DNA from: Anaeramoeba ignava BMAN
Lineage: Eukaryota; Protista; Anaeramoebae
Length of the DNA: 64,000 nucleotides
Assembly (NCBI GenBank): GCA_028826165.1
Contig: JAPDFW010000105.1
Span: forward strand, 151,468-215,467
Reading direction: 5' to 3'
Positions 2,085-29,626 of the stretch are shown here, piece by piece; positions within the stretch are counted from its first letter, which is position 1; each line of letters begins with the position of its first letter. The position numbers were made by a program, and so were the translations under genes. Under the pieces are notes generated by a model, which was not told where the DNA came from, made no database searches, and saw only the letters and a list, made by a program, of their open reading frames with translations.

Positions 2085-3885
2085 ATAAAAAAATGAAAAA
2101 TAATTTTTCCGATTTTTATTTATTTAAATAATAAAAATATTTTAATTTAAATTTAATTCTTTTCTAAATAAATATAAAATATTAATTTTTATGTTTAAAT
2201 TTATATTTTTATGTTTTGAAAATTAATAAAAAATTAATCAAAAAATGAAAAATAATTTTTCCGATTTTTATTAATTTAAATAATAAAAATATTTTAATTT
2301 ATATTTAATTCTTTTTTAAATAAATATAAAATAATAATTTTTATGTTTAAATTTATATTTTTATGTTTTAAAAATTAATAAAAAATTAATCAAAAAATGA
2401 AAAATAATTTTTCCGATTTTTATTTATTTAAATAATTAAAATATTTTAATTTAAATTTAATTCTTTTCTAAATAAATATAAAATAATAATTTTTATGTTT
2501 AAATATATATTTTTATATTTTTAAAATTAATAAAAATTAATCAAAAATGAAAAATAATTTTTCCGATTTTTATTAATTTAAATAATTAAAATATTTTAAT
2601 TTATATTTAATTCTTTTTAAATAAATATAAAATAATAATTTTTATGTCTAAATTTATATTTTTATGTTTTAAAAATTAATAAAAATTAATCAAAAATGAA
2701 AAATAATTTTTCCGATTTTTATTAATTTAAATAATTAAAATATTTTTAATTTATATTTAATTCTTTTCAAATAAATATGAAATAATAATTTTTATGTTTA
2801 AATTTATATTTTTATGTTTTAAAAATTAATAAAAATTAATCAAAAATGAAAAATAATTTTTCCGATTTTTATTAATTTAAATAATTAAAATATTTTAATT
2901 TAAATTTAATTCTTTTTTAAATAAATATAAAATAATAATTTTTATGTTCAAATTTATATTTTTTATGTTTTGAAAATTAATAAAAATTAATCAAAAATGA
3001 AAAATAATTTTTCCGATTTTTATTAATTTAAATAATAAAAATATTTTAATTTATATTTAATTCTTTTTAAATAAATATGAAATAATAATTTTTTTATGTC
3101 TAAATTTATATTTTTATGTTTTGAAAAATTAATAAAAATTAATCAAAAATGAAAAATAATTTTTCCGATTTTTATTAATTTAAATAATAAAAATATTTTA
3201 ATTTAAATTTAATTCTTTTTAAAATAAATATAAAATAATAATTTTTATGTCTAAATTTATATTTTTATGTTTTAAAAATTAATCAAAAATTAATCAAAAA
3301 TGAAAAATAATTTTTCCGATTTTTATTTAATTTAAATAATAAAAATATTTTAATTTAAATTTAATTCTTTTTAAATAAATATAAAATAATAATTTTTATG
3401 TCTAAATATATATTTTTATGTTTTAAAAATTAATAAAAAATTAATCAAAAAAATGAAAAATAATTTTTCCGATTTTTATTTATTTAAATAATAAAAATAT
3501 TTTAATTTAAATTTAATTCTTTTTTAAATAAATATAAAATAATAATTTTTATGTTTAAATATATATTTTTATGTTTTAAAAATTAATCAAAAATTAATCA
3601 AAAAATGAAAAATAATTTTTCCGATTTTTATTTATTTAAATAATTAAAATATTTTAATTTAAATTTAATTCTTTTTTAAATAAATATAAAATAATAATTT
3701 TTATGTCTAAATTTATATTTTTATGTTTTAAAAATTAATAAAAAATTAATAAAAAAATGAAAAATAATTTTTCCGATTTTTATTTATTTAAATAATAAAA
3801 ATATTTTAATTTAAATTTAATTCTTTTTTAAATAAATATGAAATAATAATTTTTATGTTTAAATATATATTTTTATGTTTTGAAA
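2085..3885. repeat. Minisatellite: 12 tandem copies of a ~151-bp AT-rich unit in a divergent intergenic region
   Basis: Landmark aaaaatgaaaaataatttttccgattttt recurs with CCGA at about 2109, 2261, 2413, 2563, 2712, 2862, 3013, 3165, 3316, 3469, 3621 and 3773. Confidence 0.95.
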
Positions 3886-3959
3886 AAAAATTTTCCCCAA
3901 ATTCATTTTTTCATTTTTCTATTTTTTAATTTATTCATTTTTCTGTTTTAATTTCTTTA

Positions 3960-6900
3960 ATGAAAAGTGTTTTTGTTTGTGGTACAAATTCAAATCATTC
4001 TTTACTTTATCATGGTTCACAATCAATAATGAAAAAAAAACCAATTAAAATTGATAATTTAATTGAAAATTTGTTCTCAAAAGAAAATATTAAATTTATT
4101 AATTGTGGATCTTCAATGACAATTTTAACATTAAATTCAGGAGATTTAATAATATGGGGTTTAGAACAAATTCAAGAAAACGAGAAAAAAGAAAAAGAAA
4201 AAGAAAAAGAAAAAGAAAATCATTTAATGTTTTCAAAAGAAAATATCAAAAAAATATCTAAATCAATTTTCCAAATTCATAAATTTAAAGGAAAAAATAT
4301 TCAAATGATTTCATGTGGAAGTTTTTCAATTTTAATTCTTGTGGAAAATAAAGTTTATTTGAGTAATTTATTGCTTCCAAGTCAAAAAAAAATGCAAATT
4401 ATATTTGAAGAAATTTCATCATTTCAAAAAGAAAAAATAATTATTAATTCAATTTGTGCAGGAAGTACATTTTATTTTGCAGTTGATGAAAAGTAAATCC
4501 AAATCAAAATTTAAAATCAAAATTAAAATCAAATTAAAATTAAAATTAAAATTAAAATCAAAATTAAAAATTGAAATCAAAATTAAAATTAAAATTAAAA
4601 TCAAAATCAAAATTGAAATTAAAATCAAAATTAAAATTAAAATTAAAATTAAAATTAAAATTAAAAATAAAATTAAAATTAAAATCAAAATCAAAATTAA
4701 AATCAAAATCAAAATCAAAATCAAAATTAAAATCAAAATATAAAATCAAAATCAAAATCAAAATCAAAATTAAAATTTAAATCAAAATTAAAATTAAAAT
4801 TAAAATTGAAATCAAAATTAAAATTAAAATTAAAATTAAAATTAAAATCAAAATTAAAATTAAAATTAAAATTAAAATTAAAATTAAAATTAAAATTAAA
4901 ATTAAAATCAAAATCAAAATCAAAATTAAAATCAAAATTAAAATTAAAATTAAAATTAAAATTAAAATTAAAAATATTAAAATTAAAAATCAAAATCAAA
5001 ATCAAAAATCCAAAATCAAAAAAAATCAAAAATTAAAATTAAAATCAAAATTAAAATTAAAATCAAAATCAAAATCAAAATTAAAATTAAATTTAAAATC
5101 AAAATCAAAATCAAAATCAAAATTAAAATCAAAATATAAAATCAAAATCAAAATCAAAATTAAAATTAAAATTAAAATTAAAATTAAAATTAAAATTTAA
5201 ATCAAAATCAAAATCAAAATTAAAATCAAAATCAAAATCAAAATTAAAATTAAAATTAAAATCAAAATTAAAATTAAAAATTGAAATCAAAATTAAAATT
5301 ATAATCAAAATCAAAATCAAAATTAAAATTAAAATTAAAATCAAAATTAAAATTAAAAATTGAAATCAAAATCAAAATTCAAAATTTAAATCAAAATTAA
5401 AATTAAAATTAAAATTAAAATTCAAAATCAAAATTAAAATCAAAATTAAAAATTGAAATCAAAATTAAAATCAAAATCAAAATTAAAATTAAAATTAAAA
5501 TTAAAATTAAAATTAAAATTATAATCAAAATTAAAATTAAAATTAAAATTAAAAATAAAATTAAAATCAAAATTAAAATCAAAATTAAAATCAAAATATA
5601 AAATCAAAATCAAAATCAAAATTAAAATTTAAATCAAAATTAAAATTAAAATTAAAATTCAAAATTAAAATTAAAAATTGAAATTAAAATTAAAATTAAA
5701 ATTAAAATCAAAATTAAAATTAAAATCAAAATCATTTGTAGAAAAAATCTATATTCTTGGGGTGATAACTCATATGGACAACTTGGTCTTTCAGATACAA
5801 AATCAAGAGAAAAACCTGAATTAATTGTTCAACTTAATCAATCAATTTCACAAATATCAGCTGGCTCACATCATTTTATTGCATTAACTCCAACAAATAA
5901 ATTATTTTCTTGCGGTAGAAACAGAAACGGACAATTAGGATTAAACGATTTCGATGATAGAAAAACTCCCGAATTAATTCAATTAAACAATCAAATTGGA
6001 ACATTAATTAAGATTTTTTGTGCAGATGAAACAACTTTTCTTTTAAATGAATTTGGAAAAGTTTATATTTGTGGAAAAATGTATAAGGAAACAGAAATTC
6101 AACCTCAAAAACAAGCAGAATTTATTGAGTTAATCTTCCCAGAGAATGCTATTATCACAAAAATATTTGGAAATGGAGGATATGGAGAAAGTTATAGTTT
6201 ATTTATTGATTCAAATGGAAAAGGATATGGATTTGGATCAAACAAATTTGGTGCACTTGGAATTGAATCAAATCAGCCACAAAACAAACCCAAAAGAATA
6301 AATCTTCCTGATGATCATTTACTTATTGATTGTGGATGTGGATGGACACATTCATGTTTTATTACAAATTCAAAAGAAAATCAAAATGTTGTTTATCTTT
6401 CTAAAAAAGAAATTAAACAAGAATTAATTGAAGAGAAAAAAAAGATACGTTCTTTTGGAAATTTCCATGTTCTTCCACCAGAACAAATTATTCCCATTTT
6501 AGAATATTTAAATCATCAGCAACTATGTATGATATCAATGGTTTCAGAAGGATTTCATAGCATTTCCAGCCAAAATTGGTTATGGAAACCTATTTTCGAT
6601 AAATATATTGGATTGGAACTTACTCAAGAAGAAAAAGAAATTTTTCAAAATCCAGAATTACAAGATTTTGAATGGAAATTTATTTCTGTTCCTCATTTAT
6701 CTCCTTATGGAAAAGTTATTTATGGTAAAAATGTTAAAAATCTTGGGTTTGGAAGTGTGAATAAAAAGTTTTTTGGGAAGAAAAGTAAGAAAGTATTAAT
6801 GTTAGGATTAGATAATTCAGGAAGAACTGTAATTCTTTATGGATTAAAAATTGGTGAAGTTGTAACAACAATACCAACAATAGGTTTGAATATTTAATTC

Positions 6901-7938
6901 AATTTAATATTCAATTTAATATTCGATTCAATTTAATATTCAATTTAATATTCGATTCAATTTAATATTCAATTTAATATTCAATTCAATATTTAATTCA
7001 ATATTTAATTTAATATTTAATTTAATTCAATTCAATTTAATTCAATTTAATTCAATTTAATTCAATTTAATTCAATTCAATATTTAATTTAATATTTAAT
7101 TCAATTCAATATTTAATATTTAATTTAATATTTAATTTAATATTCAATTCAATATTTAATTCAATTCAATATTTAATTTAATATTCAATTCAATTCAATA
7201 TTTAATTTAATATTTAATTCAATTCAATATTTAATATTTAATTTAATATTTAATTTAATATTCAATTCAATATTTAATTCAATTTAATATTCAATTCAAT
7301 ATTTAATCCAATTCAATATTTAATTCAATTCAATTCAATATTTAATTCAATTTAATATTCAATTCAATATTTAATTTCAATATTTTATTCAATTTGATTC
7401 AATTCAATTTAATTCAATTTAATATTTAATTTGAATTCAATTCAATATTTAATATTCAATTCAATTCAATATTTAATTTAATATTTAATTCAATATTCAA
7501 TTAGGTTTTAATGTTGAAACAATAAAGAAAAAAGGATTTTCTTTTCACTTAAATATTTGGGAAGTTTCAGGAGGATATGCTATTCGTTCTTTATGGAGAC
7601 ATTATTTTAATGAAGTTGATGCATTAGTTTGGGCTATTGATGTTCATGATCAAAGAATTGAAGAATCAAAAACAGAATTATTAAAACTTTTAAAAGATGA
7701 AAATTTAAAAGAAGTTAAATGTGTTTTAATTATTTGTACTAAATTAGATATTCCAAATGGTTTGAAAACTGAAGAGATTGTTAAATTACTTGGATTGGAT
7801 GAATTTGATAAAATTTGGGGTGTTTTTCCAACTTCTCAACAAAATTTATCCACTTTTTGGAAAGCTTCTTTTAGATGGTTAGTTTGGATTTTGATGTTCA
7901 TGATCAAAAATCAAGAAAAAGAAAAAGAAAACTTTTAA
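3960..7938 (+). CDS. RCC1-repeat / F-box / Arf-like (degenerate) GTPase fusion protein; join(3960..4492,5742..6883,7505..7938)
   Basis: Splicing gives RCC1 blades ([43 protein letters not shown]), an F-box-like [45 protein letters not shown], then Arf-like [32 protein letters not shown]|FNVETI...[18 protein letters not shown]. Both introns are GT-AG and phase-compatible. Confidence 0.85.
4493..5741 (+). repeat. 1249-bp intron consisting of (AAAATY)n hexamer microsatellite
   Basis: GTAAAT...TTTGTAG boundaries; interior is almost entirely aaaatc/aaaatt. Confidence 0.9.
6884..7504 (+). repeat. 621-bp intron of degenerate AATTC/AATATTT microsatellite
   Basis: GTTTGA...TTTAG; interrupts the Arf switch-I motif PTIG|FNVE. 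Confidence 0.9.
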
Positions 7939-8090
7939 AAAGAAAATTTAAAAGAAGTTAAATTTAAAATTTAAATCTAAATTAGAAATCAAATGGTTTA
8001 AAATGAAGAGATTGTTAAATTACTTTAAAATTATAAAATTTGGGGTGTTTTTCAAAAAACAAAAATCCAAAGCTTTTAATGGTTAAAATT
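7879..8090 (+). other. Deletion-riddled tandem second copy of about 7625-7880 (Arf-domain 3' exon); decayed duplication or consensus artefact
   Basis: Collinear shared words: tagtttgg, ttgatgttcatgatcaaa, aaaacttttaaaa, gaaaatttaaaagaagttaaat, aaatggttt, gaagagattgttaaattactt, taaaatttggggtgttttt, aaagcttt. Confidence 0.75.
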
Positions 8091-8290: not shown

Positions 8291-10050
8291 ATGAATGATT
8301 GTTTATTTTTTGGTTCAAATGAATATCCAAAACTTATCAAAAATAAACCAAATGAAATAATAAAACCAATTCAATTTAAATTTGAAAATGAAAATGAAAA
8401 TGAAAATGAAAAACAAATTAAACAAATTTCATCAGGAATATTTTCAACAATTTTCCTTTTTAAAAATGGAAAAGCAATAGAATATTTAAATGTAAATAAT
8501 TCAAAACAAAAACCTGAAAAAATCCAAATTGAAGAAAAATATTCAAAAAGTAACTGTTGGTGTTCGAAATGAAGCTATTTTAACAAAAGAAGGAAATGTA
8601 TTTGCCAAAGGAAAAGATATTAACCCAAAAAATCTAAAAGAATTTATCAATATTTCATCATTAATTGAAGATACAAATGATAGAATAATTGAAGATATTG
8701 TTTCTGGAGCTTATTCAATTTATTTATTAACTTCAAATCAAAATGTTTATGGAATTGGTTCAAATCACTTTTGTCAACTTGGTTTTGATTCTGAAACACT
8801 TAAAAAAACAGAAAAGCCAATTTTAATGATGAAAAATGTTTCTAAAATATTTTCAGGAAATTCTTCACATCATATTTTTCTTTTAAATTCAAATCAAGAA
8901 TTATTTGGATCTGGAAATAATCAATATGGTCAACTTGGATTAGGAGAATCAATAGAAGAAACAAAAATCCAAAAATTAACCAAAATACAAAATATTCCAA
9001 AAGGTAAAATAATTGATATTAAATGTGGAGGGATTCATTCAATAATGTTGATTGAAAATCAAAATCAAAATCCAAAAAGAAAACTTTATTCATGTGGAGA
9101 TTATCGATATAATGGACTTGGCAAATATGGAAATATTTATGAATTTACTGAAATCAAATCATCTTTATTTGAAAATGATGATAATATTATTGAAATTTCT
9201 GTTGGAAATGATCATACTTTGATTTTAACATCTAATTCGAAATTAATTGGATTTGGAAATGATTATGGTGAATTAGGAACTGGAGATACAAAATCTCAAA
9301 GAATTCCAATTCAAATTAAACTTCCTAAATTAAGATTTAATGAAAATATTTCCAATTATCATATCTCTTGTGGAGATTCCAATTCATTTCTTTATTATTC
9401 TCCTTCTTTTTCCAATCTTGAAGAAGATTTGATAAAATTATTTAGAAGAAAAGAATTTTGTAATATTTCATTTAAAACCGAAAATGGAGAAATAATCAAA
9501 GCTCATAAATTAATATTGAAATATAGATTAAATCAAAATCAAAATCAAATTGAAAAACTTAAAGAAATTATTTCAAAAAAATCAATTAAAGAATCAAATC
9601 AAATATTTGAAATGATTTATTCAAACAGAATAATAAATCCAAAATTATATTCTGAAATTAAAGAAATTATAAATTCAAATGAAAAAATAGAAGAAACAAT
9701 GAAAAGAATTTATTTAAATGAAAATGAAAATGAAAAAGATTTTATTATTGAAAGAAAAGAAAAACAATATAAATTTCCTAAATTAATATTAATAATGAGA
9801 AGTGAATTATATCGAGGAATGTTTTTATCTGTAACTGAAGATAAATCTAATAAAGTTACAGATTATAGTGAATTAAGTAATAAATCATTCCAAATATTTG
9901 AATATTGGATTTATTCAAATCAAATTAAAGATGGAGTTCGAATTACACAAGAAATTATTAATGAAATTCAAAATTGGAATTGATTATTTTCAATTAAATC
10001 AAACAAATCCAAATTTATTTGATTTATTAATTAACAAATTTAATAATTAA
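8291..10050 (+). CDS. RCC1-repeat + double BTB/POZ protein; two apparent +1 A-run frameshifts (about 8536 and 9970)
   Basis: RCC1 blades (YGIGSNHFCQLG, FGSGNNQYGQLGLG, ISVGNDHTLIL) followed by BTB motifs FCNISF...IKAHKLILKYR and KFPKLILIMRSELYRGMF. Removing one A at each site joins the ORFs and extends to TAA at 10050. Confidence 0.85.
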
Positions 10051-11394: not shown

Positions 11395-14213
11395 TCAGTT
11401 TTCTTCAATAAAAAGAACAATTTTTCCTGAAAAATTCAATTCTTTTAAAGTTTTTTCAAAATTTTCTTTATCATCTAAAGTAAATTTAATTTTTGGATAA
11501 GTCATTAATAAAGATAACTTATCATATTTCAATTCAATTAATTGAGCAAAAAGAAAAACATGTTCAAGAGTTGAATTGATTGAAAATTTTCTTGTTTCTC
11601 GAGATCCATCAATTTTTCTGAATAAAATTTCAACAATTTCTTCATTTGAATCTTCTTTTGGTTCAGAAGGTAATTTTTTTAATAAATTTTCTTCTTTTTC
11701 TCTTAATTTTTCTTTTTCTTCTTCTTCTTTTCTTTTTTTTTCTTCTTCTTCTTTTATTTTTATTATTTCTTCTTGTAATTCTCTTTGATCTCTTTCTCGA
11801 TCTATTTTTAATGATTCATTATATTCTTGATCTTGACTTTCTCTGATTAATGCACTTGAATTTTTTCTGAGTAATCCTGAATGAATTGTTGAAAAAACTT
11901 CTTGAAGATTCATTAATCTTGAAAATAATTCTGATTTATCAACAGGGCCTTTATTAAATATTAAATATTAATTAAATATTAAATAATAAATATTAAATAT
12001 TAAATATTAAATATTAAATAATAAATATTAAATAATAAATATTAAATAATAAATATTAAATATTATCCAAAAATATTAAATATAAAATATTATCCAAAAA
12101 TATTAAATATTAAATATAAAATAATAAATATTAAATAAATATAAAATATTAAATATAAAATATTAAATATTAAATATTATCCAAAAATATTAAATATTAA
12201 ATATTATCCAAAAATATTAAATAATAAATATTAAATAATAAATATTAAATAATATCCAAAAATAATAAATATTAAATATTAAATATTATCCAAAAATAAT
12301 AAATATTAAATATTAAATAATAAATATTAAATATAAAATATTAAATATTAAATAATAAATATAAAATATTAAATATAAAATATTAAATATAAAATATTAA
12401 TTAAATAATAAATATTAAATATAAAATATTAAATAAATATTAAATATTAAATATTAAATATTAAATATTAAATATAAAATATAAAATATTATCCAAAAAT
12501 ATTAAATGAAAAATACCTTGAATAACATCCAAAATATTTAATTCATGCACATTATCAACAACTGCTAAAAAAGGAAAACTTTCTAAATTAATTGAATTTT
12601 TAAATTCATGCATAATTTGTGGATCAATATTATCAAAATCACCAACCCAAAATAAAAAATTTGTATTAATAAAGGTTGACACAGAAAAATCACCAAGAAT
12701 TTGTTGACAAAAATTAAGAACATTTTGGATATCAGTTTGAGAATGAAGATAAACAATAACAGGAATTCTTGAAGATTTTGATTTTTCCAAAGTTTTTTTC
12801 ATATTTCCAGTTTGCATTGCAGGATGAACTGGAGCATAAACCTCTTCAAAAAGCTTGAAATTTTCATTATTTTCTGTAATATTTGGAATTCCATTTTGAA
12901 GAAAATTATTGAAATTCATTTTTTCATTGATTTCATTTTCTGTTTTTGTATATCCTGTTGAAAGATCTATTTCATATAATTCTTGATTTGCTTTTTCTAT
13001 TTCTTCTTGTTTTCTTCTTTCTTCTTCTTGTTTTTTTCTTTCTTCTTCTTTTTCTTCTGTTATTTTTTTTTCTATTTCGATTATTTTGGAAATTTCTTCT
13101 TCTTTTGATCCAATCAGTTGAATTTTATTGATTGTATTTGATTTAAGATTCATTTTAGAAAGAGGCATCTTTTCATTTATAAATTTTGAAAGAAATTTAA
13201 TTATAAATTTAATTATAAATATAATTATAAATTTAATTTTAAATTTAATTTTAAATTTTGAAATGAATATAATTATAAATATAATTATAAATTTAATTAC
13301 AAATTTAATTTTAATTATAAATTTAATTATAATTTTAATTATAAATTTTGAAATGAATTTAATTATAAATTTAATTCTAAATTTAATTATAAATATAATT
13401 ATAAATATAATTATAAATATAATTATAAATTTTTAAATAAATTTAATTATAAATTTAATTATAAATATAATTATAAATTTCATTATAAATTTTATTATAA
13501 ATTTAATTATAAATTTAATTATAAATATAATTATAAATTTAATTATAAATTTAATGATAAATTTAATTATAAATTTAATTATAAATATAATTATAAATTT
13601 AATGATAAATTTAATTATAAATTTAATTATAAATTTAATTATGAATATAATTATAAATTTAATTATAATTTTAATTATGAATATAATTATAAATTTAATT
13701 ACAAATTTAATTATAAATTTAATTATATTTTAATTATAAATTTTGAAATGAATTTAATTATAAATTCAATTCTAAATTTAATTATAAACTATAATTATAA
13801 ATATAATTATAAAAATTTTGAAATGAATTTAATTATAAATATAATGATAAATTTTGATATAAATTTAATTATAAATTTAATTATAAATATAATTATAAAT
13901 TTTATTATAAATTTAATTATAAATTTAATTATGAATTTTATTATAAATTTAATTATAAATATAATGATAAATATAATTATAAATTTAATTATAAATTTAA
14001 TTATAAATTTAATTGTAAATTTCTAAATGGATTTGTAAATGGTTTTTTTACATTTTCATCTTTAAATTTTATTCCAATTATTTTTTGTCTTTCTGGTTTA
14101 ATTCCAGTTAATTCAAAAAGTTTTAATTTTAAATCTTTTAAAAATTTTGTTGATTCAATATCAAATTTTATTTGTTGTTTTTGAAATTTAACATTAAATT
14201 GAAATAAACTCAT
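11395..14213 (-). CDS. UBL + UAS + coiled-coil + UBX protein (FAF1/FAF2-like p97/Cdc48 cofactor); exons 14213-14052, 13168-12517, 11948-11395
   Basis: N-terminal UBL (LKLKLFELTGIKPERQKIIG...KIQLIGS), UAS (VIVYLHS...FCQQIL...FINTNFLFW), LIRESQDQEYNESLKIDRER, and UBX (LPSEP...ILFRKIDGSRETRKF...MTYPK...TLKELNF). Confidence 0.85.
11949..12516 (-). repeat. 568-bp intron of ~7-bp TAAATAT-type microsatellite
   Basis: GT at 12516, AAG at 11949; interior (taaatat/taaataa)n. Confidence 0.85.
13169..14051 (-). repeat. 883-bp intron of 12-bp AAATTTAATTAT-type satellite
   Basis: GT at 14051, AAG at 13169; 12-bp periodicity. Confidence 0.85.
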
Positions 14214-14408: not shown

Positions 14409-17400
14409 TTAATTAGATTTTTTTTTCTTTCTATTTTTTGATTTAGATTTTGATTTAGATTTAGATTTTGATTTAGATTTAGATTTAGATTTTGATTCAT
14501 TATCAGATTTAGATTTAGATTTAGATTTAGATTTAGATTTAGATTCAGATTTAGATTTAGATTCATTATCAGATTTAGATTTTGATTTTGATTCAGATTT
14601 TGATTTAGATTTAGATTTTGATTCAGATTTTGATTTAGATTTAGATTTTGATTTAGATTTAGATTTAGATTTTGATTCAGATTTTGATTTTGATTCATTA
14701 TCAGATTTAGATTTTGATTTAGATTTAGATTCAGATTTAGATTCAGATTTAGATTTAGATTTTGATTCATTATCAGATTTAGATTTTGATTCAGATTTAG
14801 ATTCAGATTTAGATTTAGATTCAGAATTAGATTTAGATTTTGATTCATTATCAGATTTAGATTTAGATTCAGATTTTGATTTAGATTTAGATTCAGATTT
14901 TGATTTAGATTCAGATTTTGATTTAGATTTTGATTCATTATCAGATTCAGATTTAGATTTAGATTTAGATTTAGATTCATTATCAGATTTATATTTTGAT
15001 TTAGATTTTGATTCAGATTTTGATTTTGATTTTGATTTTGATTCAGATTTTGATTTTGATTTAGATTTTGATTTAGATTTTGATTTTGATAATTTCTTTT
15101 TATTGTTCTTCTTTTTATTGTTTTTCTTTTTATTGTTCTTCTTTTTTTTGTTCTTCTTTTTATTCTTTTTCTTTTTGTTCTTTTTCTTATTACTTTTCTT
15201 TTTATGTTCTTCTTTTTGTTCTTTTTCTTGTTCTTTTTCTTTTTCTTCTTCAGAATGTGAAGCAATGTTTCTTTCTGAATTTGAATGAGAAATTTCAATC
15301 GGATCTTTTTTCCTTTTTGATCTTTTCTTTTTCGATCTTTGATTTTGATTTTGATTTTGATTTTCTTTTTCAATTTGAATTTCTTGTTCTTTTTCAATTT
15401 GAATTTCTTTTCCTTTTTCAATTTGAATTTCTTTTCCTTTTTCAATTAAGTTTAAATTTTTTGGATCAGGTTTTGGTTCTTCTGTTTTTTGTTCATTTAA
15501 TAAGGATCTTCTTGCTCTTGGTGTTTTTTTATTTGATCTTGAATTAGCCACAGTTCTTCTTCTTCTATTTTTCTTTAAAGTATAATCATTTGCAGCTGAA
15601 TAAGAATATTTCTTTTTATCTTTCATTTCTTGAGCTTCAACAACATCTAATTTCTCTAAAAATTCTTTTAAATCAGCTTTCCAAAAAGTTTCAATTGAAG
15701 TTTCTTCTAAAAGTTTAATTGATTTTTCTGTTTCTTCTCTTTCTTTAATTAATTCTTGATATTTTTCATAAGTAAGATTCCAAAGAGACATTGATAAAAG
15801 ATAATCAAAACCATGAGAGTTAATTTGATTTTTTTGATTTTGATTTTGATTTGGTTTTGATTTTTTTGATTTTTTTGATTTTCTTTTTTTTGATTTTTTT
15901 GATTTTCTTGGTTTTGGTTTTGATTTTGATTTTTTCTCTTCATTTTCTTCATTTTCATCATTTTCATCATTTAAATTTTTTTTACTCAAATTCTTAAAAA
16001 TTGGATCGAAATTTAATTTTGTTAATTGAGAAATAACTTTATCTTTTTTAACATTTCGAATCTTAATTTGATCTTCAATTACCATTTCAATAAATCTTGC
16101 TTTATTTGATAATTTTTTGGCTTCTTCTCTTAAATTATTAAGAAGAAATTCTTTTCTTTTATAATAAAATTCTTTTCTAATAACAAAAAATTCTTTAAGA
16201 ATTTCTTCTGGTGAATTAAATTTCTTAATTTTTCCATCAGAATCAAATAAATGCATATTATCTAAAGAAATTGTTGAATTTAAACGGAATACTTTTTCTA
16301 TTCCCAGTTTTTCTACTTTTTCCATGTTTGAAGTTGTTAAAGTAACAAGAAAACAAACTGTTGAATCAGTGTGATATTCAGTAAAATCTTCAATTAAATG
16401 ATTTTTTTGACCAGGAAGTAAAGTTTCTAAAAATTCTTTATAATTTTGAGTCCAAGAAAGTTTACAATGAAGAGGAAGTTCTGAGATTTCAAGAGTTTGT
16501 TCATCAATTTTCTTATAAATTCCATGACAAACAAATTTTCGAATTCTTCTTTTTTGATTTTGATTTTGATTTTGATTTTGATTTTGATTTTGATTTTGAT
16601 TTTGATTTTGATTTTCATTTTCATTTTCATTTTCATTTTGATTTTTATTTTGATTTTCATTTTGATTTTGATTTTGATTTTGATTTTCATTTTGATTTTG
16701 ATTTCCATTTTGATTTTCATTTTGATTTTGATTTTCATTTTCTTTTTCTTTTTGATTTTCATTTTGATTTTCATTTTGATTTTCATTTTCATTTTGATTT
16801 TGATTTTGATTTTGATTTTGATTTGTATTTTTTTGTGTTCTTCTTCTTTTTAATGGATCATGATATTGAAATGGCTCAATAGATCCTTTAAATCCTTTAA
16901 ACCAAGGTATCATTTCAAAAGGTTCTTCATTATTTATCATTCTTTCCAAATTCATTACCAAATCACGAGGATTATAATTTGGAACATAAGTTGAAAAACC
17001 AGTTCCAATTCCTTCACTTCCATTCACAAGAACAAGAGGAAGAATTGGACAGAAAAAACGAGGTTCAATCACTTGGTTATCTTCAATAAGATTATCAAGA
17101 ACAGGATCATCTTTTTGATTGAAAAGAACACGAGTAATTGGAGATAAAGTAGTGAAAATATAACGAGAACTTGCAGCATCTTTTCCACCTTGTAATCTTG
17201 TTCCAAATTGTCCGTTGGGAAGAAGAAGATTCACATTATTTGATCCAACAAAATTCTGTGCCATTCCAATTATTGTTGTAGCAAGACTCTGTTCGCCATG
17301 ATGATAAGCTGAATTTTCTGCAACATAACCTGATAATTGAGCAACTTTGACTTCTGAACGAAGTTTCCTTTTAAAGCAAGCAAAAAGTATCTTGCGTTGC

Positions 17401-19624
17401 CCTGGTTTCAATCCATCAACAAGCGATGGAATGGATCTTTTATTATCGGCATCTGAAAAAAGAATCAATTCCTTATTGATGAAATCGGAATAAGTCAAAG
17501 ATGACTGTGTATGATCTATATAAAGATTTTCAGGAACTTGAACTAACCAATCTTTTCGGTCTTTTATTTTCTTCTTGGAAAAGGCGAGTTCTATTGAAGA
17601 ATCATCTTGCGGACCTGAATAAACGAAATTGAGACGATGCCTTTGAAGATGAGAAAAGTATTCTTTGGCTTCTCTTGATGTACTTGTACCGAGCCCTTTG
17701 TAGTACTTTGTTTTCCATTTCTTATGGCTTTCGCGACTGGACAACCATTGATTAAATTCTGGAACAGTGAAGAAGGACTTTGTCTTCTTGCCCTTACTAA
17801 CCTTGACTATCGGAGTAACAAACTCTTGAACGAATCCTGGAAGCTTGATCAAAGATGGCCAGAAGCGGTGAATAAGATTAATCACAAGACCTTTGATATG
17901 AGAACCATCAAAATCTTGATCCGCCATAATCATTAAATGCCCATATCGAAGTCCGTTTGTGTTGTTATACTCTTTATCATGCTTCAACCCAAGAACTTTG
18001 ATAATTCCGTTTACTTCAGCATTTTCAAGAATTTGTTTGCTACTTGCATCTCTCACATTCAGAAGCTTCCCCCGTAATGGAAGCACTCCAAACTCATTCC
18101 TTCCCACAACACCAAGACCTGATACTGCAAGAGCCTTTGCAGAATCTCCCTCAGTAAGTATCAACGTGCAATGCTTTGATCGACGAGTTCCTGCATCATT
18201 CGCATCATCAAGTTTTGGAACACCTGTTATTCTTTTCTGCATTTTGCCTGCTGTGGATTTTTTCAATAAATTTTTCTCTCGGTTTTTCTCCCAACTTAGA
18301 ATTGTGTCTGAAATGCCAGATTTCGCTATTCGATTGAGGAATCTTGTTGAGAGTTTGGGTGTCGATCCAAAATTTTTGGGAGAAGAAGTTAATGTTTCTT
18401 TTGTTTGTGAATCAAAAGAAGGGTTTTCAATCAGACAATTAATAAAGATCTGGAGATGATGCTTGATTTGGAAGGGTTTGACACGGGCTTCTTTGTTTTT
18501 CTTGGAGACATTTTCAAGAATTGCTTGTGTGATCTGATCAGAAATTTCTCTAACATGAGATCCACCTTTGATTGTCCAGATCGAGTTTACAAAACTAAAT
18601 TGATGGAACTGTCCATCGCTATATGTTGCAAGTATTTCCCAACGATCAGATACACGCTCATAAACACGGGGTGCGTTCATATAGCGCTGATCGGATAAAA
18701 ATAGTTCACAATATTGTTTGAATGTTTTTATCGGAATAACAACTTCATTTAGAGTTACTTTCACTTTTGGATTGCAACCTGCAACATCATATACCCTTTT
18801 CTTCATTAGCGCAATTGTGTCTTTGTCAAGATTTTGCATGTGAAATTTCTCAAGATCAGGTTTAAATGTGATCTTAGTAAAATCTGCTCTTTTTGTTTTT
18901 TTTATTATTGGCTCTGATTTCTCACTCATATTTTTGGAATATTTTTGGTAAAAACTAAATCCAGTATTTCTATCCGAAGTTTCGACAATAAACTCATTGG
19001 AAAAAATATTGCAAAGCTTGGCTCCATAGCCGTTTCTCCCTCCAGTTACTTTTTTTTCAGAATCATCATAATGACTACTTGTGAGTAAGTGTCCAAAAAT
19101 TAATTCAGGAACATAAATTCCTTCTTTTTTGTGAATCTCAACGGGAATCCCCTTTCCGTTATTATAGATTGATATTGTGTTGTTTTCTGCATCGATTGTT
19201 ACCTTAATATTGTTCATTTTTGGATCTCTTTGTTTATTATCTGCTGCATTAACTAAAATTTCATCAAATATTTTATAAAGTCCAGGAACGTAAGTTATTT
19301 CTCTATAATTCATTCCCTTTTCTTCATCAAATACCCATAGTTGATCTTTAACTGCTTCTACTGATCCTATATAAGTGTCTGGACGAAGAAGAATGTGTTC
19401 TAATTGTGTCTTTTTTTATTTTTCAAATTTAAAATTCAAATCCAAATCAAATTTTTATTTTATTTTTTTTTTTTTACTTTTTTTTGATAAATTTCTTCAA
19501 CAGTTTTTGTTTCTTCTTCTTTATTATCTTCTTTTTTATCTTTCTTATTTTTATCTTTATTATCTTTCTTTTCTTCTTTCTTTTCTTTCTTATTTTTATT
19601 ATCTTTCTTAGATTTTCTTGGCAT
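14409..19624 (-). CDS. TOP2: DNA topoisomerase II (type IIA); exons 19624-19478 and 19409-14409
   Basis: EEIYQKK|[64 protein letters not shown] and active-site ASSRYIFT. A 68-bp intron links the upstream ATG at 19624. Confidence 0.97.
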
Positions 19625-20394: not shown

Positions 20395-23300
20395 TTAATT
20401 CATCCCAAACTTTTCTTTACTCATTTCTATCAATAAATCAATTATGGAATTTTGATTTAATTGATAATAATCTTTTGCATCTGAAAATTCTTCAATAATT
20501 TTTTTTGTTAATTCTTTTTCTTTCAATTTATCATAATAAAGAAAATAAACTAATTCTTGAATTGTTTGATATGATTTTCCTGAATAATCGTGAACTTGAT
20601 TTGTTGAATCAACAACATTCAAAAACATTCCTTGATATAATTCACTTCTTAAAAATAAGACTAATTTATGAACTTTAATTTCTTTTTCTTCACAAATTAT
20701 GCTAAAATCTTTCGTTGTTTCTTCTTTGTATAAATTTTTGAAATCTCTTATTAATCCTAATCTTCCTTTTTTTGATTCAATCCAATTTGAATCAATCTCC
20801 ATTTCTTTGAAAAATTGTGAAATTTTGCTTTTATTTAAAAATTCCTTTTCTTTTTGTTGTTCAATTAGATCTTGAGATCTGAATCTTAAATTAATTTGTT
20901 TTTTAAATTCTTCAAATTCAAAAAAACCTGAATAAATGAACTTTAAAATGATTTCAACTTCTTCTTTGCTTTTTTGTAAACAGTTATTAACAAAATTTTG
21001 TAAAATTGTTTCATCATTATCAAATCTTAATAATAAAAATAATTTATGAACTTGGAATTTGTAAAAATCTTTTGTTTCAATTTGGAAATCTGTTAATTGG
21101 TTTGATTTAAATAATTTATTCATATCTTCATTAATTGAATAAATTTGATTTAATTTTGAAATTAATTCTCTGGAAAGATTTTTATTAATTGGATTATCTA
21201 AATAAGAAATAATTGCATCATTCATTAATAATAAATTTATAATGTTCGTTTTTTTATCTTGAATTGAATTTTCTAAAATTGTTTTTTGAGCATGATCTTT
21301 TAAATTGATATTAACTCCTTTTTTTAATAAAAATTGAATAATTTCATTTGAATTGTTTTTATAAGCAATTTCTAAAAGTGATATTTTACTTGAAAATGTT
21401 GAATAATATTCTAAATTCATATTAACATCAAATCCTTTTCGAAACATTAATTTTAAAATTTGAATTGAATTATTTTCACAAACAATAAACAATGGTGTTT
21501 TTAAATTGTTGTTTCTAACATTAAAATCAGCTCCTTTTTCAATTAATAATTCTGCAATTTTATTTGATTTTTTTTTACAAGCAATATGTAAAGGTGTTTT
21601 GGATTTATTATTTTTAATATTAACATCAGCTCCTTTTTCAATCAATAATTTAATAATTTTGATTGAATTTTCATTCTGATTTTGAGAAAAGAAATGTAAT
21701 AATGTTTCTTTTTTTCTATTTTGAACATTAACATCAGCTCCTTTTTCAATCAATAAAGTAACAATTTCAAATGATTTTCTTTGCCAAGCAATTTGTAAAA
21801 GAGATTGATTAAATTTATTCTTGGAATTAACATCAGCTCCTTTTTCAATCAATAATTTAATAAATTCAATTTTGTTTTTATGAATTAAAATTTGTAAAGG
21901 AGTTTCTTGATTTTTTGTTTTTGCATTAATATCAGCACTTTTTTCAATTAATACTTTAATAAATTCACTTGAATTTGAATTTGGATTTTGACAAGCATAA
22001 TGTAAAGGAGTTTCTTGATTTTTTGTTTTTGCATTAATATCAGCACCTTTTTCAATTAATAATTTGAAAATTTGAATGGAGTTTTCATTCTGATTTTGGC
22101 AAATAAAATGTAAAGGTGTTTCTTCATTTCTTGTTTTAATATTAATATCTGCTCCTTTTTCAATTAATAATTTAATAATTTCAACAGAGTTTTCATTTTT
22201 ACTTTGAAAAGCATAATGTAAAGCAGTTTTACTTTCATTTCTGTTTTTAATATTAATATCAGCACCTTTTTCAATTAATAATTTGATAATTTCAATAGAA
22301 TTTGGATTTTGACTTTGACAAATAAAATGTAAAGGTGTTTCTTGAAATATTGTTTTTGCATTAATATCAGCACCTTTTTCAATCAATAATTTGATAATTT
22401 CAATCAAATTTGGATTTTGACTTTGACAAATAAAATGTAAAGGTGTTTCTTTTACTTCATTTCTTGTATTAATATTAGCACCGTTTTCAATTAATAATTT
22501 GATAATTTCAAATGAATTTTCATTTAAATTTTGATCTTGGCAAATAAAATGTAAAGGTGTTTTTTTATCTCTATCTTGAGAATTAATATCAGCACCTTTT
22601 TCAATTAACAATTTAATAAATTCAATCGAGTTTTCATTTCTATTTTGACAAATAAAATGTAAAGGTGTTTTTTGATCTCTATCTTGAGAATTAATATCAG
22701 AACCTTTTTCAATTAATAATTTTATAGTTTCAATTGAATTTTTGTTTTGACTTTTAAAAGCAAAATGTAATGATGTTTCTTGATTTTTGTTTTTGACATT
22801 AACATCAGCTCCTTTTTCAATTAACAAATTTATAATTTCAATCGAATTTTCATTTGGACTTTGACAAATAAAATGTAAAGGAGTATTTTGTTCAATTGTT
22901 TTTGCATTAATGTCAGCTCCGTTTTCAATCAATAAATTGATAATTTCGCTTGAATTTCTGTTTTGACTTTGACAAGAATAATGTAAAGGAGTTTCTTGAT
23001 TTCTGTTTTTGATATCAACATCAGCTCCTTTTTCAATTAACAAATTTATAATTTCAATCGAATTTTCATGTAACCTTTTGCAATAAAAATGTAAAAGTGT
23101 TTCTTCTTTTTCATTTTTGACATTGATATCAATCCCTTTTTCAATTAATAACTTGATAAATTCAATTGCAATTTCGTTTTGACTTTGGCAAATTAAATGT
23201 AAAAGTAATTCCTGATCTTTGTTTTTGTCAATTACATTCGCTCCGCTTTCAATTAATAATTTGATAATTTCAATTTTGTTGTTTTGAATTGAAATTTGTA

Positions 23301-24606
23301 AAGGAGTTTCTTTTTTTCTATTTTGGATATTAATATCAGCACCTTTTTCAATCAACAATTTCATAATCTCACTTGAATTTCTGTTTTGACTTTGACAGGT
23401 ATAATGTAAAGGTGTTTCTTCATTTTTGTTTTTAGCATTAACATCAGCACCTTTTTCAATTAAAAATTTCGTAATTTCAAATGAATTTTCGTTTTGACTT
23501 TGACAGGCATAATGTAAAGGTGTTTCTTGATTTCCAGTGTTGATATCTACATTAATTCCCTTTTCAATCAATAATTTCACAATTTCAAACGCATTTCTGT
23601 TTTGACTTTGACAGGCATAATGTAAACAATTTTGTTGTTTTCGATTTTTGACAGTTACATTAACTCCCTTTTCAATCAATAATTTCACAATTTCAAACGC
23701 ATTTCCGTTTTGACTTTGGCAAATTAAATTCAAAGGTGTTTCTTGACTTGTGTTTTTGGCATTGATATCAACTCCTTTCGAAATTAATAATCTTATTATT
23801 TCAATGCAATTTTCGTTTTTATTTTGACAAGCAAAATGCAAAGGTGTTTCTTTTTTTTTTGTTCTGCAATTAATATCACTTCGCTTTTCAATCAATAACT
23901 CCACAATTTCAATGGATTTTTCGTTTTGATTTTCGCAGGCAAAATGTAAAGGTAATTTATTAAACTGATTTTTGACAGTTACATCAGCACCTTCTTCAAT
24001 CAATAATTTCACAATTTCAAACGCATTTCTGTTTTGACTTTGGCACGCATAATGCAAAGGTGTTTCTTGATAATTATTTTCGGCATTTACTCGAAAACCG
24101 CTTTCAATCAATAATTTCACAATTTCAAACGCATTTTCGTTTTGACTTTGACAGGCAAAATGTAAAGGTGTTTCTTGATAATTATTCTGCGCATCAATAT
24201 CTACCTCTTTTTCAACCAACAATTTCACAATTTCAAACGCATTTTCGTTTTGACTTTGACAGATGAAATGTAAAGGTGTTTGTTGATACTCGTTTTTGGC
24301 ATTAACATCTGCTCCTTTTTCAACAAGGAATTCAACAATTTTGCTTGTGTTTTCGTGTTGACTTTGGCAGGCGTAATGCAAAGGTGTTTCATATTTGTTG
24401 TTTTTTACATTAACATCTGCTCCTTTTTCAACTAATTTTTTCACAACTTCAATTGAATTTTTGTGTTGGTTTTTACAAGCCGAATGCAAAAAAGTCTCAT
24501 TAAAATTGTTTTTGGAATTCACATCAATTTCTTTTTCAATAATAGATTGAATAATTTCGATAGAATCATTTAAAGAAGAATTGAATAAATTTTCTTTTTC
24601 TTCCAT
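20395..24606 (-). CDS. Ankyrin-repeat (about 30 repeats, mostly 36 aa) + double BTB protein; likely start ATG 24606
   Basis: ETPLH(F/Y)xCQSQN...EIIKLLIEKGADIN repeats; C-terminal TDFQI...FQVHKLFLLLRF and KDFSI...IKVHKLVLFLRSELYQGMF. The ORF extension upstream of 24606 is an AAAAAC microsatellite containing the Inr-like motif. Confidence 0.9.
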   Translation of the reverse strand: MEEKENLFNSSLNDSIEIIQSIIEKEIDVNSKNNFNETFLHSACKNQHKNSIEVVKKLVEKGADVNVKNNKYETPLHYACQSQHENTSKIVEFLVEKGADVNAKNEYQQTPLHFICQSQNENAFEIVKLLVEKEVDIDAQNNYQETPLHFACQSQNENAFEIVKLLIESGFRVNAENNYQETPLHYACQSQNRNAFEIVKLLIEEGADVTVKNQFNKLPLHFACENQNEKSIEIVELLIEKRSDINCRTKKKETPLHFACQNKNENCIEIIRLLISKGVDINAKNTSQETPLNLICQSQNGNAFEIVKLLIEKGVNVTVKNRKQQNCLHYACQSQNRNAFEIVKLLIEKGINVDINTGNQETPLHYACQSQNENSFEITKFLIEKGADVNAKNKNEETPLHYTCQSQNRNSSEIMKLLIEKGADINIQNRKKETPLQISIQNNKIEIIKLLIESGANVIDKNKDQELLLHLICQSQNEIAIEFIKLLIEKGIDINVKNEKEETLLHFYCKRLHENSIEIINLLIEKGADVDIKNRNQETPLHYSCQSQNRNSSEIINLLIENGADINAKTIEQNTPLHFICQSPNENSIEIINLLIEKGADVNVKNKNQETSLHFAFKSQNKNSIETIKLLIEKGSDINSQDRDQKTPLHFICQNRNENSIEFIKLLIEKGADINSQDRDKKTPLHFICQDQNLNENSFEIIKLLIENGANINTRNEVKETPLHFICQSQNPNLIEIIKLLIEKGADINAKTIFQETPLHFICQSQNPNSIEIIKLLIEKGADINIKNRNESKTALHYAFQSKNENSVEIIKLLIEKGADINIKTRNEETPLHFICQNQNENSIQIFKLLIEKGADINAKTKNQETPLHYACQNPNSNSSEFIKVLIEKSADINAKTKNQETPLQILIHKNKIEFIKLLIEKGADVNSKNKFNQSLLQIAWQRKSFEIVTLLIEKGADVNVQNRKKETLLHFFSQNQNENSIKIIKLLIEKGADVNIKNNKSKTPLHIACKKKSNKIAELLIEKGADFNVRNNNLKTPLFIVCENNSIQILKLMFRKGFDVNMNLEYYSTFSSKISLLEIAYKNNSNEIIQFLLKKGVNINLKDHAQKTILENSIQDKKTNIINLLLMNDAIISYLDNPINKNLSRELISKLNQIYSINEDMNKLFKSNQLTDFQIETKDFYKFQVHKLFLLLRFDNDETILQNFVNNCLQKSKEEVEIILKFIYSGFFEFEEFKKQINLRFRSQDLIEQQKEKEFLNKSKISQFFKEMEIDSNWIESKKGRLGLIRDFKNLYKEETTKDFSIICEEKEIKVHKLVLFLRSELYQGMFLNVVDSTNQVHDYSGKSYQTIQELVYFLYYDKLKEKELTKKIIEEFSDAKDYYQLNQNSIIDLLIEMSKEKFGMN

Positions 24607-24956
24607 TTCAAAAAAAAGATGAAAAAAATGAAAACAAAAACAAAAACAAAAACAAAAACAAAACAAAAACAAAAACAAAAACCAAAACCAAAACAAAAAC
24701 AAAAACAAAAACAAAAACAAAAAATGAAAACAAAAACAAAACAAAGAAGAAAAACAAAAACAAAACAAAAACGAAAACAAAAATAAAAAAGTGGAACAAA
24801 AAAAGTGGATTTTAATTTTGATTTTGATTTTAATTTTGGATTTTTATTTTGATTTTAATTTTAATTTTGATTTTGATTTTGATTTTAATTTTGATTTTGA
24901 TTTTGATTTTGATTTTAATTTTGAATTTGATTTTGAATTAAAAAAAATAATCATTC

Positions 24957-28000: not shown

Positions 28001-29626
28001 GAAAAAAATAGGAACATCTTGATTGATGTTTTTGTCTCATTAACAGCTTATGCAAATGCACAATATTATTATCAGGAGAAAAAAAAACTTGCTGAAAAAG
28101 AAACAAAGACTCGAGAGGCAAGAAAACGGGTTTTAAGAAAAGCAGAGCAAAAAACAAAAGCAAAACTCGAGGATCTTGGCGATCGTGTTTCAAATACAAC
28201 TTTGAAACAACTTCGCAAGTTGATGTGGTTTGAGAAATTCTATTGGTTCATTTCCTCAGATAGTTATATTGTTGTTGCAGGAAGAGATGCTCAACAAAAT
28301 GAGTTATTAGTGAAAAAATATATGAAAAAAAACGATGTTTTTGTTCATGCAAATATTCATGGAGCTGCAACCGTTGTTGTCAAAAATTTCCCGTCAGGTG
28401 GCCCTATTCCTGAAACTACACTTGTTGAAGCAGGCACTTTTAGTATTGTCAGAAGTGCTGCTTGGAAAACAAAAGTCACAACAAGTGCTTGGTGGGTTCA
28501 TTCTTATCAAGTCTCAAAAACTGCTCAATCAGGTGAATATTTATCAACTGGCAGTTTTGTTATTCGTGGAAAGAAAAATTTCCTTCCTCCTTCTTATCTT
28601 GTAATGGGTATTGGTCTTCTTTTCCGTTTGGAAGATTCTTATTTAAAATATCACGAACATGAACATAATCAAAAATTATTTTCAGTTTTGAAAGGGGAAC
28701 AAAAAAACAAAGAAGAAATTAAAGAAGAAATTCAAGAAGAAATTAAAGAAGAAATCAAAGAAGAAATTAAAGAAGAAATCAAAGAAGAAATTAAAGAAGA
28801 AATTAAAGAAGAAATTAAAGAAGAAATTCAAAATGAAAATGAAAATGAAAATGAAAATGAAATCAAAGAAGAAATTCAAAAACCAATCAAAAAGAAAACT
28901 TATCTTTCAGCAAGACAAAAAAAACTCAAAAAAAAAGGTCGTGATATCAATGAACCTAAAAAAGAAATCCCAAAAAAAGATACAGAAGCTGTCATCCAAA
29001 ATGCTAAAAACAAATATAAAGAACCAGATCCAAAATCATTTTCAAATACAAGAAGAGAAAAGAAATTAAAGAAAAAGAAAACAAAAAAAGTCAACGAAAT
29101 TAATGATTTGAAGCAAAAAGAAGTGATGAACCAAATTTTAAACCAAAACATTCAAAATCAAGAAAATTCAAATAATCTCGAAACAGATTCTCCCAATTCA
29201 CAAATCATTGAAGATGTCGATCAAAATACACAAGAATCAGAAGAAACTTCTACAATAGATAACGAATTAGGTATTATTAAATTCTTGACAGGAAATCCCC
29301 GTCCAAATGATGAACTTCTTTATGCCATTTCAATGTGTGCACCTTATTCTGCAATTGAAAGATGCAAATATAAACTCAAACTTGTTGCTGGAACAGAAAA
29401 AAAAGGAAAGCTTTTGAAAACTATTATTCATAATTTCCTTAAACAAGTTTCAGAAAAAGAAGCAGCTCTTGTTCATATAATGGAATATCCAATTATGGAA
29501 CAAGCTTTAATTGGAAATGCAAGAATTGAATATGAAAATGATTCAAATTCAAAAAAAGGAAATAAAAATAAAAATCAAACCAAAAATCAAAACAAAAACA
29601 AAAATACAAATAAAAGCAAAAAATAA
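25060..29626 (+). CDS. NEMF: NEMF/Rqc2 ribosome quality-control factor; join(25060..25404,26700..29626) with an apparent 1-bp A-run deletion near 27343
   Basis: FTSVDVR, GYRLQNIYSL, FTLKLRKHIKTKRL, GIDRTIDF, ELFSK|GNVILTD, WFEKFYWFISSD...GRDAQQNELLVKKY, HANIHGA, QVSKTAQSGEYLSTGSFVIRGKKNFL and MCAPYSA. Confidence 0.95.
25405..26699 (+). repeat. 1295-bp intron of 12-13-bp AAAATT(T)ATTTAT satellite
   Basis: GTGAAT...AAAAAG; interior is a near-pure A/T periodic repeat. Confidence 0.9.

What the first reader, a model, noticed from the sequence alone, without database searches (positions are those of the whole stretch)
3960..7938. Hidden RCC1 + F-box + Arf-like pseudo-GTPase fusion gene
Seen: removing two satellite-filled GT-AG introns joins three exons into one ORF with RCC1 blades, an F-box-like motif (about 6455-6600) and a C-terminal Arf/Arl G-domain. 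The G-domain is altered at key sites: P-loop GLDNSGRT (GKT to GRT), switch II WEVSGGY instead of WDVGGQ (Asp and catalytic Gln lost), and G4 TKLD instead of NKxD. Switch I (TTIPTIGFNVE) and LWRHYF are well kept. Established: F-boxes recruit Skp1-Cul1, RCC1 propellers bind small GTPases, and Arf domains fused to E3 modules are rare (TRIM23/ARD1 is a RING-type case). Inference: an SCF receptor that uses a locked Arf mimic as bait for Arf effectors, GEFs or GAPs, or for pathogen/symbiont Arf-targeting proteins. I do not know this three-domain architecture from other organisms.
Basis: partly seen in the sequence, partly recalled or inferred. Interest (0 to 1): 0.85.

Follow-up and report, generated by a model that had tools for sequence, protein, structure and literature searches.

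The report
Ubiquitin-ligase adaptor carrying a broken Arf
This is a real, spliced gene for a protein-tagging adaptor fused to an Arf switch that cannot switch off; it is the most worn-down of nine copies here and belongs to an unstudied family spread across distant single-celled eukaryotes, whose parts were listed in a 2021 table but never recognised as one family.

Summary
Observation confirmed. Three exons give a 702-aa ORF: RCC1 propeller, F-box, C-terminal Arf1-like G domain. Exon 2 alone carries all three parts, so the fusion does not depend on splicing. Junction 1 appears in a spliced public contig; junction 2 was not covered. The architecture is not unique. This genome (probably Anaeramoeba ignava, inferred) has nine loci, and 54 homologues occur in Amoebozoa, Euglenozoa, Picozoa and metagenomes. 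Vargova et al. 2021 (PMC8358228) tabulated RCC+F-box+Arf proteins in Acanthamoeba, Mastigamoeba and Thecamonas without treating them as a family. Not found in the papers searched: none of 42 scored homologues keeps catalytic Gln71 (mostly Pro), though most keep GKT and NKxD; one origin is not rejected by AU tests on either domain. The family looks like a hydrolysis-dead Arf1 on an SCF adaptor, possibly an ancient overlooked paralogue. This copy is further decayed: 3/10 nucleotide-site residues kept against 13/15 on the effector face. Best reading (50%): an SCF receptor using a fixed Arf face as bait. Function is untested. The scan noted four paralogues in this genome before. Searches were exon by exon; the joined protein was not searched or folded.

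The parts
3960..4492 (+). Exon 1: start codon and first, divergent RCC1 blades, with a short (KE)n insert
   Evidence: Pfam WD40_RLD E 2.9e-10; N-terminus matches the starts of four paralogues; its 3' end is in a spliced contig
4493..5741 (+). Intron 1, 1249 nt, AAATTA satellite, phase 2
   Evidence: GT..AG with a single AG; tandem repeat; skipped in contig 1 of run X1
5742..6883 (+). Exon 2: last RCC1 blades, F-box, linker, Arf G1 and switch I, in one open frame
   Evidence: Pfam; top hit of the family profile in the genome, E 1.6e-49 over positions 4-249 of 250
5742..6380 (+). RCC1-like propeller, C-terminal blades, with the family motifs GGyG and CGWxH
   Evidence: AlphaFold2 pLDDT mostly above 90; Z 22 to UVR8, RPGR, HERC2
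6469..6597 (+). F-box
   Evidence: PF12937 29.5 bits against cut-off 24.3; model matches the F-boxes of Skp1-FBXO31 (Z 8.6) and SKP1-FBXO3 (Z 8.4)
6805..6828 (+). P-loop with Lys30 to Arg
   Evidence: Sequence; GRT also in 4 of 42 homologues
6884..7504 (+). Intron 2, 621 nt, AT satellite, phase 1, inside switch I
   Evidence: GT..AG with a single AG and a single GT; same position in most paralogues; no transcript coverage obtained
7505..7938 (+). Exon 3: rest of the Arf G domain (D67E, G69S, Q71G, N126T, G5 lost; F51, W66, Y81 kept) and stop
   Evidence: Pfam Arf E 1.6e-25; best PDB hits Arf1 and Arf6; residue table
7877..8056 (+). Decayed tandem copy of exon-3 DNA; supplies the last ~17 codons of the ORF
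   Evidence: Five collinear direct repeats spaced 225-254 nt

Best explanation
An SCF (Skp1-Cullin-F-box) substrate receptor of a widespread protist family with the order RCC1 - F-box - Arf1. The F-box binds Skp1 (inferred from family knowledge and fold). The Arf domain lies C-terminal to the F-box, where F-box proteins usually carry the substrate-binding domain. It cannot do GAP-stimulated hydrolysis because Gln71 is lost, so it shows a fixed Arf switch I/II face. That face binds Arf effectors, GAPs or GEFs and brings them to ubiquitination. The propeller is an accessory binding or localisation module. Most family members should be GTP-loaded. This copy has also lost residues for Mg/phosphate and guanine binding, so it is probably a weak-binding or nucleotide-independent pseudo-GTPase that keeps only the surface. 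Shown: gene, domains, motif states, family. Inferred: Skp1 binding, nucleotide state, bait role.
For: F-box by Pfam and structure. Skp1 and 8 cullin hits in the genome. Gln71 kept in 0 of 42 homologues (P25, E10, G6, A1) and 0 of the own paralogues read, while GKT is kept in 38/42 and NKxD in 37/37; Gln71 is needed for GAP-stimulated hydrolysis (PMC6724607). In this copy 13/15 effector-face residues match canonical Arf, against 3/10 nucleotide-site and 27/107 other residues (Fisher p 0.009 and 7e-6). F-box+Arf proteins without RCC1 carry the same Gln-to-Pro change (Acanthamoeba Arf1i, Bodo Arf1e), which points to F-box+Arf as the core unit.
Against: No binding or substrate data. The effector-face set was chosen from memory after seeing the sequence, includes core residues (W66, L77, W78, Y81), and is also the best-kept part of ordinary Arfs. 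Some F-box proteins bind substrate through an N-terminal domain. A pseudo-GTPase can use a surface other than the switches (AAGAB, PMC12490416). The long Arf branch of this copy (1.4 against 0.46 for RCC1) also fits relaxed selection.
Confidence: 0.5

Rival explanations
1. SCF receptor in which the RCC1 propeller binds the substrate (possibly a small GTPase), and the fixed-on Arf domain only places the ligase at Golgi or endosomal coats, or regulates it within the molecule as the Rho domain does in RhoBTB2.
For: Propellers are common F-box substrate domains; HERC1 RCC1-like domains bind ARF1 (PMC6692442); the RhoBTB2 Rho domain autoinhibits Cul3 binding (PMC3946479); a remnant of the Arf N-terminal helix (FFGKK) precedes the G domain; the family has its own conserved blade motif (17/48 against 0/35 other RCC1 proteins).
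Against: RCC1-less F-box+Arf proteins share the Gln-to-Pro change; the propeller is N-terminal to the F-box; the propeller is less conserved than the Arf face across the family.
Confidence: 0.28
2. This copy is a redundant paralogue whose Arf domain is decaying after local gene expansion. The family function lives in other copies, and the extra changes mean nothing special.
For: Nine loci, two with frameshifts or breaks (C46, C139); longest-but-one Arf branch; tail replaced by a decayed duplicate; a genome rich in expanded F-box and RCC1 genes.
Against: Intact 702-codon ORF, spliced contig, non-random retention of the effector face, best score to the family profile in the genome; G4 Asn loss is shared with five paralogues, so it predates this copy.
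Confidence: 0.13
3. Not mainly a ligase: the propeller acts as an exchange or release factor on its own or another small GTPase, and the protein is a signalling scaffold or a sponge for Arf GAPs and effectors.
For: RCC1 is the Ran GEF; HERC1 RLD1 releases GDP from ARF (PMC6692442); pTM 0.73 for a full-length homologue hints at some fixed domain packing.
Against: The F-box core (G, LP, L, W) is conserved across the family; a hydrolysis-dead domain needs little exchange activity; no contact map was available.
Confidence: 0.09

Closest known systems
RCC/F-box/Arf entries in Vargova et al. 2021, Supplementary Table 1 (AcaArf1g, MbaArf1e, MbaArf1f, TtrArlX1, EgrArf1h; PMC8358228)
   Same: Same domain order and homologous sequence; AcaArf1g is P0365 here. 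Those whose switch II was read lack Gln71 (Pro, Glu, Arg).
   Different: Listed singly as Arf1 or unannotated. The main text mentions F-box fusions in one sentence as generally lineage-specific, never names RCC1, and does not discuss the Gln loss in the passages found. This copy also lacks Lys30, Asp67, Asn126 and G5.
TRIM23/ARD1
   Same: Arf1-derived G domain at the C-terminus of a ubiquitin-ligase module.
   Different: RING-type, metazoan, an active GTPase by my recollection; no F-box or RCC1.
RhoBTB1/2 (Cul3 adaptors)
   Same: Atypical small-GTPase domain thought to lack hydrolysis, fused to a cullin adaptor (PMC3946479). Closest working analogue.
   Different: Rho not Arf, BTB-Cul3 not F-box-Skp1, GTPase at the N-terminus.
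FBX8/FBXO8
   Same: F-box protein acting in the Arf circuit (PMC6724607).
   Different: Mirror image: carries a Sec7 domain and ubiquitinates Arf6 itself.
HERC1
   Same: RCC1-like domains plus E3 activity, linked to ARF1 (PMC6692442).
   Different: HECT ligase; Arf is a separate partner.
Class I pseudoGTPases such as AAGAB
   Same: G fold with degenerate motifs used for protein binding (PMC12490416).
   Different: AAGAB binds away from the switches; here the switch face is the part kept. Nucleotide binding is untested.

Membership tests
RCC1-F-box-Arf family (architecture of AcaArf1g/MbaArf1e) | RCC1, F-box and Arf in that order in one frame | tested here: met
RCC1-F-box-Arf family (architecture of AcaArf1g/MbaArf1e) | Collinear homology across last blades, F-box and Arf start | tested here: met
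   Profile from other organisms hits positions 4-249 of 250, E 1.6e-49; alignment
RCC1-F-box-Arf family (architecture of AcaArf1g/MbaArf1e) | Catalytic Gln71 replaced | tested here: met
   Gly here; 0/42 homologues keep Gln
RCC1-F-box-Arf family (architecture of AcaArf1g/MbaArf1e) | Single origin of the family | tested here: inconclusive
   Free trees unresolved; held-together trees score higher and are not rejected, p-AU 0.53 for RCC1 and 0.70 for Arf. This does not prove a clade.
F-box proteins (SCF receptors) | F-box motif and fold | tested here: met
   PF12937 over cut-off; Z 8.4-8.6 to Skp1-bound F-boxes
F-box proteins (SCF receptors) | Binds Skp1 and supports ubiquitination | not testable with these tools
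   Skp1 and cullin genes are present; no complex prediction available
Canonical Arf GTPase | GxxxxGKT, DxxGQ, NKxD and G5 intact | tested here: not met
   GRT, EVSGG, TKLD, TSQ
Canonical Arf GTPase | Myristoylated Gly2 at the N-terminus | tested here: not met
   The G domain is C-terminal; the protein starts MKSV
Canonical Arf GTPase | Arf interswitch and triad F51/W66/Y81 | tested here: met
Class I pseudoGTPase (no binding, no hydrolysis) | No nucleotide binding | not testable with these tools
   Predicted weak from motifs only; Thr31, Thr48, Lys127 and Asp129 remain
TRIM23/ARD1 | RING, B-box, coiled coil | tested here: not met
   No such Pfam hits

The most novel reading that the evidence does not exclude
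The family is an overlooked ancient ARF paralogue, beyond the 16 inferred for the last eukaryotic common ancestor: a hydrolysis-dead Arf1 wired to SCF as a degradation trap for Arf effectors or regulators, kept in amoebae, euglenozoans, apusomonads, picozoans and metamonads and lost in animals, fungi and plants. In this genome it expanded and drifted toward nucleotide-independent decoys.
Probability: 0.3. Interest if true: 0.75.

Novelty: new variant of a known kind. Interest (0 to 1): 0.52.

Why it matters
The latest survey found in the library treats multidomain Arfs as mostly lineage-specific tinkering. A single RCC1-F-box-Arf family in at least four eukaryotic supergroups (Amoebozoa, Discoba, Picozoa, this probable metamonad; an apusomonad in the published table), all lacking the catalytic Gln, would add an ancient link between membrane traffic and SCF ubiquitination that model organisms appear to lack. 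It would also be a natural case of a GTPase frozen as a ligase substrate receptor. It is testable in Acanthamoeba or Euglena. The fusion itself is not a first sighting.

Tried and rejected
Chance or separate genes: rejected, since exon 2 alone holds all three domains and junction 1 is spliced. Unique architecture: rejected. Viral or bacterial source: scans found only plain Arf fragments; these pattern scans key on Arf peptides and could miss divergent copies. Locus L014 (RCC1 next to an Arf with Gln) is an RCC1-BTB gene beside a separate Arf-like gene. The 50%-representative search was swamped by giant RCC1 repeat proteins and gave nothing. ESM Atlas gave only generic RCC1 clusters. Free trees of single domains were unresolved; only quick trees finished. 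No RNA run was on record; only one run of unknown type was available. Reads were laid on exon 2 with short flanks because the introns are long repeats that the tool turns away, so junction 2 stays unconfirmed. Paper searches (9 run) found no functional study of the family.

Full report
Observation. The three exons (3960-4492, 5742-6883, 7505-7938) sum to 2109 nt and read as 702 codons with no internal stop. Both introns are GT..AG, 7% and 10% GC, filled with satellite, and each contains one AG only, the acceptor. Pfam, run exon by exon, finds RCC1 repeats in exons 1 and 2, an F-box-like domain over the curated cut-off at 6469-6597, and an Arf domain that stops at profile position 46 in exon 2 and resumes at 48 in exon 3. 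Exon 2 alone has RCC1, F-box, P-loop and switch I in one frame, so the fusion is visible without any splicing assumption. One public run holds the stretch (type not on record). Its 821-nt contig lies on 5742-6517 and continues upstream with the last letters of exon 1, which shows junction 1 spliced as proposed. Junction 2 had no coverage. It is supported by the single donor and acceptor, by Pfam continuity, and by the same intron position in most paralogues.

Method note. The joined protein was not searched or folded; exons were joined once in a script to check the frame. Reads were laid on exon 2 with short flanks because both introns are long repeats.

Organism. The window is on contig 106 of a 42.8-Mb assembly. 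Very high A+T, introns above 90% A+T and expanded gene families fit Anaeramoeba ignava as described in PMC11550330. This is an inference, not a look-up. That paper does not mention RCC1, F-box or these Arfs.

Paralogues. A profile built only from other organisms ranks this gene first in its own genome (E 1.6e-49, positions 4-249 of 250). It finds eight more loci, on contigs 126, 65, 20, 46, 115, 59, 139 and 55; other hits match one domain only. Eight of the nine have an F-box hit. None of those read keeps Gln71. All but this one keep GKT. G4 Asn is lost in six (His, His, Ser, Ser, Thr, Thr). The genome has one Skp1 hit, eight cullin hits and at least 124 F-box hits.

Homologues. Three searches gave 54 proteins with RCC1 plus Arf, many with a detected F-box. 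Named sources: Arcella, Pyxidicula, Copromyxa, Amoeba proteus, Acanthamoeba, Luapelamoeba, Soliformovum, Mastigella and 14 in Pelomyxa (Amoebozoa); Apiculatamorpha and Flectonema (Euglenozoa); Picozoa SAG31. Mastigamoeba and Papus were assigned from their record prefixes (my knowledge). Some transcriptomes of predators could hold prey sequence, but the same architecture is in genome assemblies. Among those scored, 0 of 42 keep the catalytic Gln (Pro 25, Glu 10, Gly 6, Ala 1), 38 of 42 keep GKT (four have GRT, as here) and 37 of 37 keep NKxD. Viral and prokaryote scans found no full fusion.

What was known. Vargova et al. [quoted passage not shown] Their Supplementary Table 1 labels AcaArf1g, MbaArf1e, MbaArf1f and TtrArlX1 as RCC + F-box, and EgrArf1h as RCC1. 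The main text never uses the word RCC1, and the group is not among their 16 ancestral paralogues. So the architecture is catalogued but not recognised as a family, and I found no functional work.

One origin? Free trees of the RCC1 part (170 columns) and of the exon-3 Arf part (about 130 columns, Gln column removed) are poorly resolved. No starred branch forces more than one origin. Trees with the family held together score higher than the free ones and are not rejected (p-AU 0.53; 0.70). A strict blade motif occurs in 17 of 48 members and 0 of 35 other RCC1 proteins. With identical domain order, collinear alignment and shared Gln loss, a single origin is likely but not shown. Ancient inheritance and transfer among phagotrophs are not separated.

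Structure. A full-length homologue (P0358) folds with pLDDT 86 and pTM 0.73 as a propeller, helical F-box region and G domain, matching UVR8, HERC2 and RCC1 propellers and Arf1. The exon-2 model of this gene matches the same propellers (Z about 22), and residues 239-322 match the F-boxes in Skp1-FBXO31 and SKP1-FBXO3 (Z 8.6, 8.4). No solved structure or large Atlas cluster with the whole architecture was found.

This copy's G domain. In Arf1 numbering: K30R, D67E, G69S, Q71G, N126T and G5 lost; T31, T48, G70, K127, D129 and the F51/W66/Y81 triad kept. In exon 3, 13 of 15 effector-face residues match canonical Arf, against 3 of 10 nucleotide-site and 27 of 107 other residues (Fisher p 0.009 and 7e-6). 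The face set came from my memory of Arf complexes, was chosen after seeing the sequence, and includes core residues, so this is suggestive only.

Mechanism. Shown: the gene, its domains, the motif states and the family. Established: F-boxes bind Skp1; Gln71 is needed for GAP-stimulated hydrolysis (PMC6724607); Arf1 binds effectors through switch I/II (PMC12490416). Inferred: the family presents a fixed Arf face on an SCF ligase. I favour bait for Arf effectors or regulators (0.5), because the Arf sits where F-box substrate domains usually sit and because RCC1-less F-box+Arf proteins share the Pro change. Rivals: propeller as substrate receptor with Arf for targeting or autoinhibition, as in RhoBTB2 (0.28; PMC3946479; HERC1 precedent PMC6692442); decay of a spare copy (0.13); non-ligase scaffold (0.09).

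Earlier scan notes. Five first-reader notes from this genome describe the same architecture: one is this stretch, four are other pieces. I read them after forming my view, and they are not independent support.

Verdict. A real gene, and a degenerate variant of a catalogued but unstudied architecture. The interest lies in the family: wide spread, universal loss of the catalytic Gln, possible ancient origin. Interest 0.52.

Noticed in passing
window 7877-8056: Decayed tandem copy of exon-3 DNA (about 7623-7831); the ORF's last ~17 codons are read from it and differ from the paralogues' tails.
   Followed up: partly
window 2089-3887: A 152-bp unit repeated about 12 times at 95% identity fills almost the whole intergenic region upstream of the gene.
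   Followed up: no
window 8291-9983 (+): Neighbouring RCC1-BTB gene with an apparent frameshift near 8530-8572.
   Followed up: partly
G000 contigs 46/126 and 59/139 (L036, L037, L034, L035): Near-identical twin paralogues; the copies on 46 and 139 have frame breaks in the middle exon (real or assembly error).
   Followed up: partly
L040:141-956: An F-box+Arf gene without RCC1 lies directly upstream of a Kelch-RCC1-F-box-Arf gene; similar short forms are AcaArf1i and Bodo Arf1e, both with Gln-to-Pro.
   Followed up: no
P0365, P0353, P0391, P0412, P0420: A subfamily adds an N-terminal Kelch propeller (Acanthamoeba, Soliformovum; Thecamonas in the published table).
   Followed up: partly
Pelomyxa schiedti proteins P0360-P0435: At least 14 family members, a second independent expansion in an anaerobic amoeba that hosts symbionts (symbionts from my knowledge); many have Glu at position 71.
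   Followed up: no
window 20395-24780 (-) and 36856-59422 (+): Tandem array of long ankyrin-repeat plus BTB-like genes, several frameshifted.
   Followed up: no
window 11395-13168 (-), 14409-19313 (-), 27344-29626 (+), 61335-61988 (-): Ordinary neighbours: FAF1/UBX p97 adaptor, topoisomerase II with long low-complexity inserts, NFACT/Rqc2-like protein, proteasome ATPase.
   Followed up: partly
G000 genome-wide: At least 124 F-box hits, many in tandem arrays (for example contigs 66, 103, 98, 71), against one Skp1 hit and eight cullin hits.
   Followed up: no
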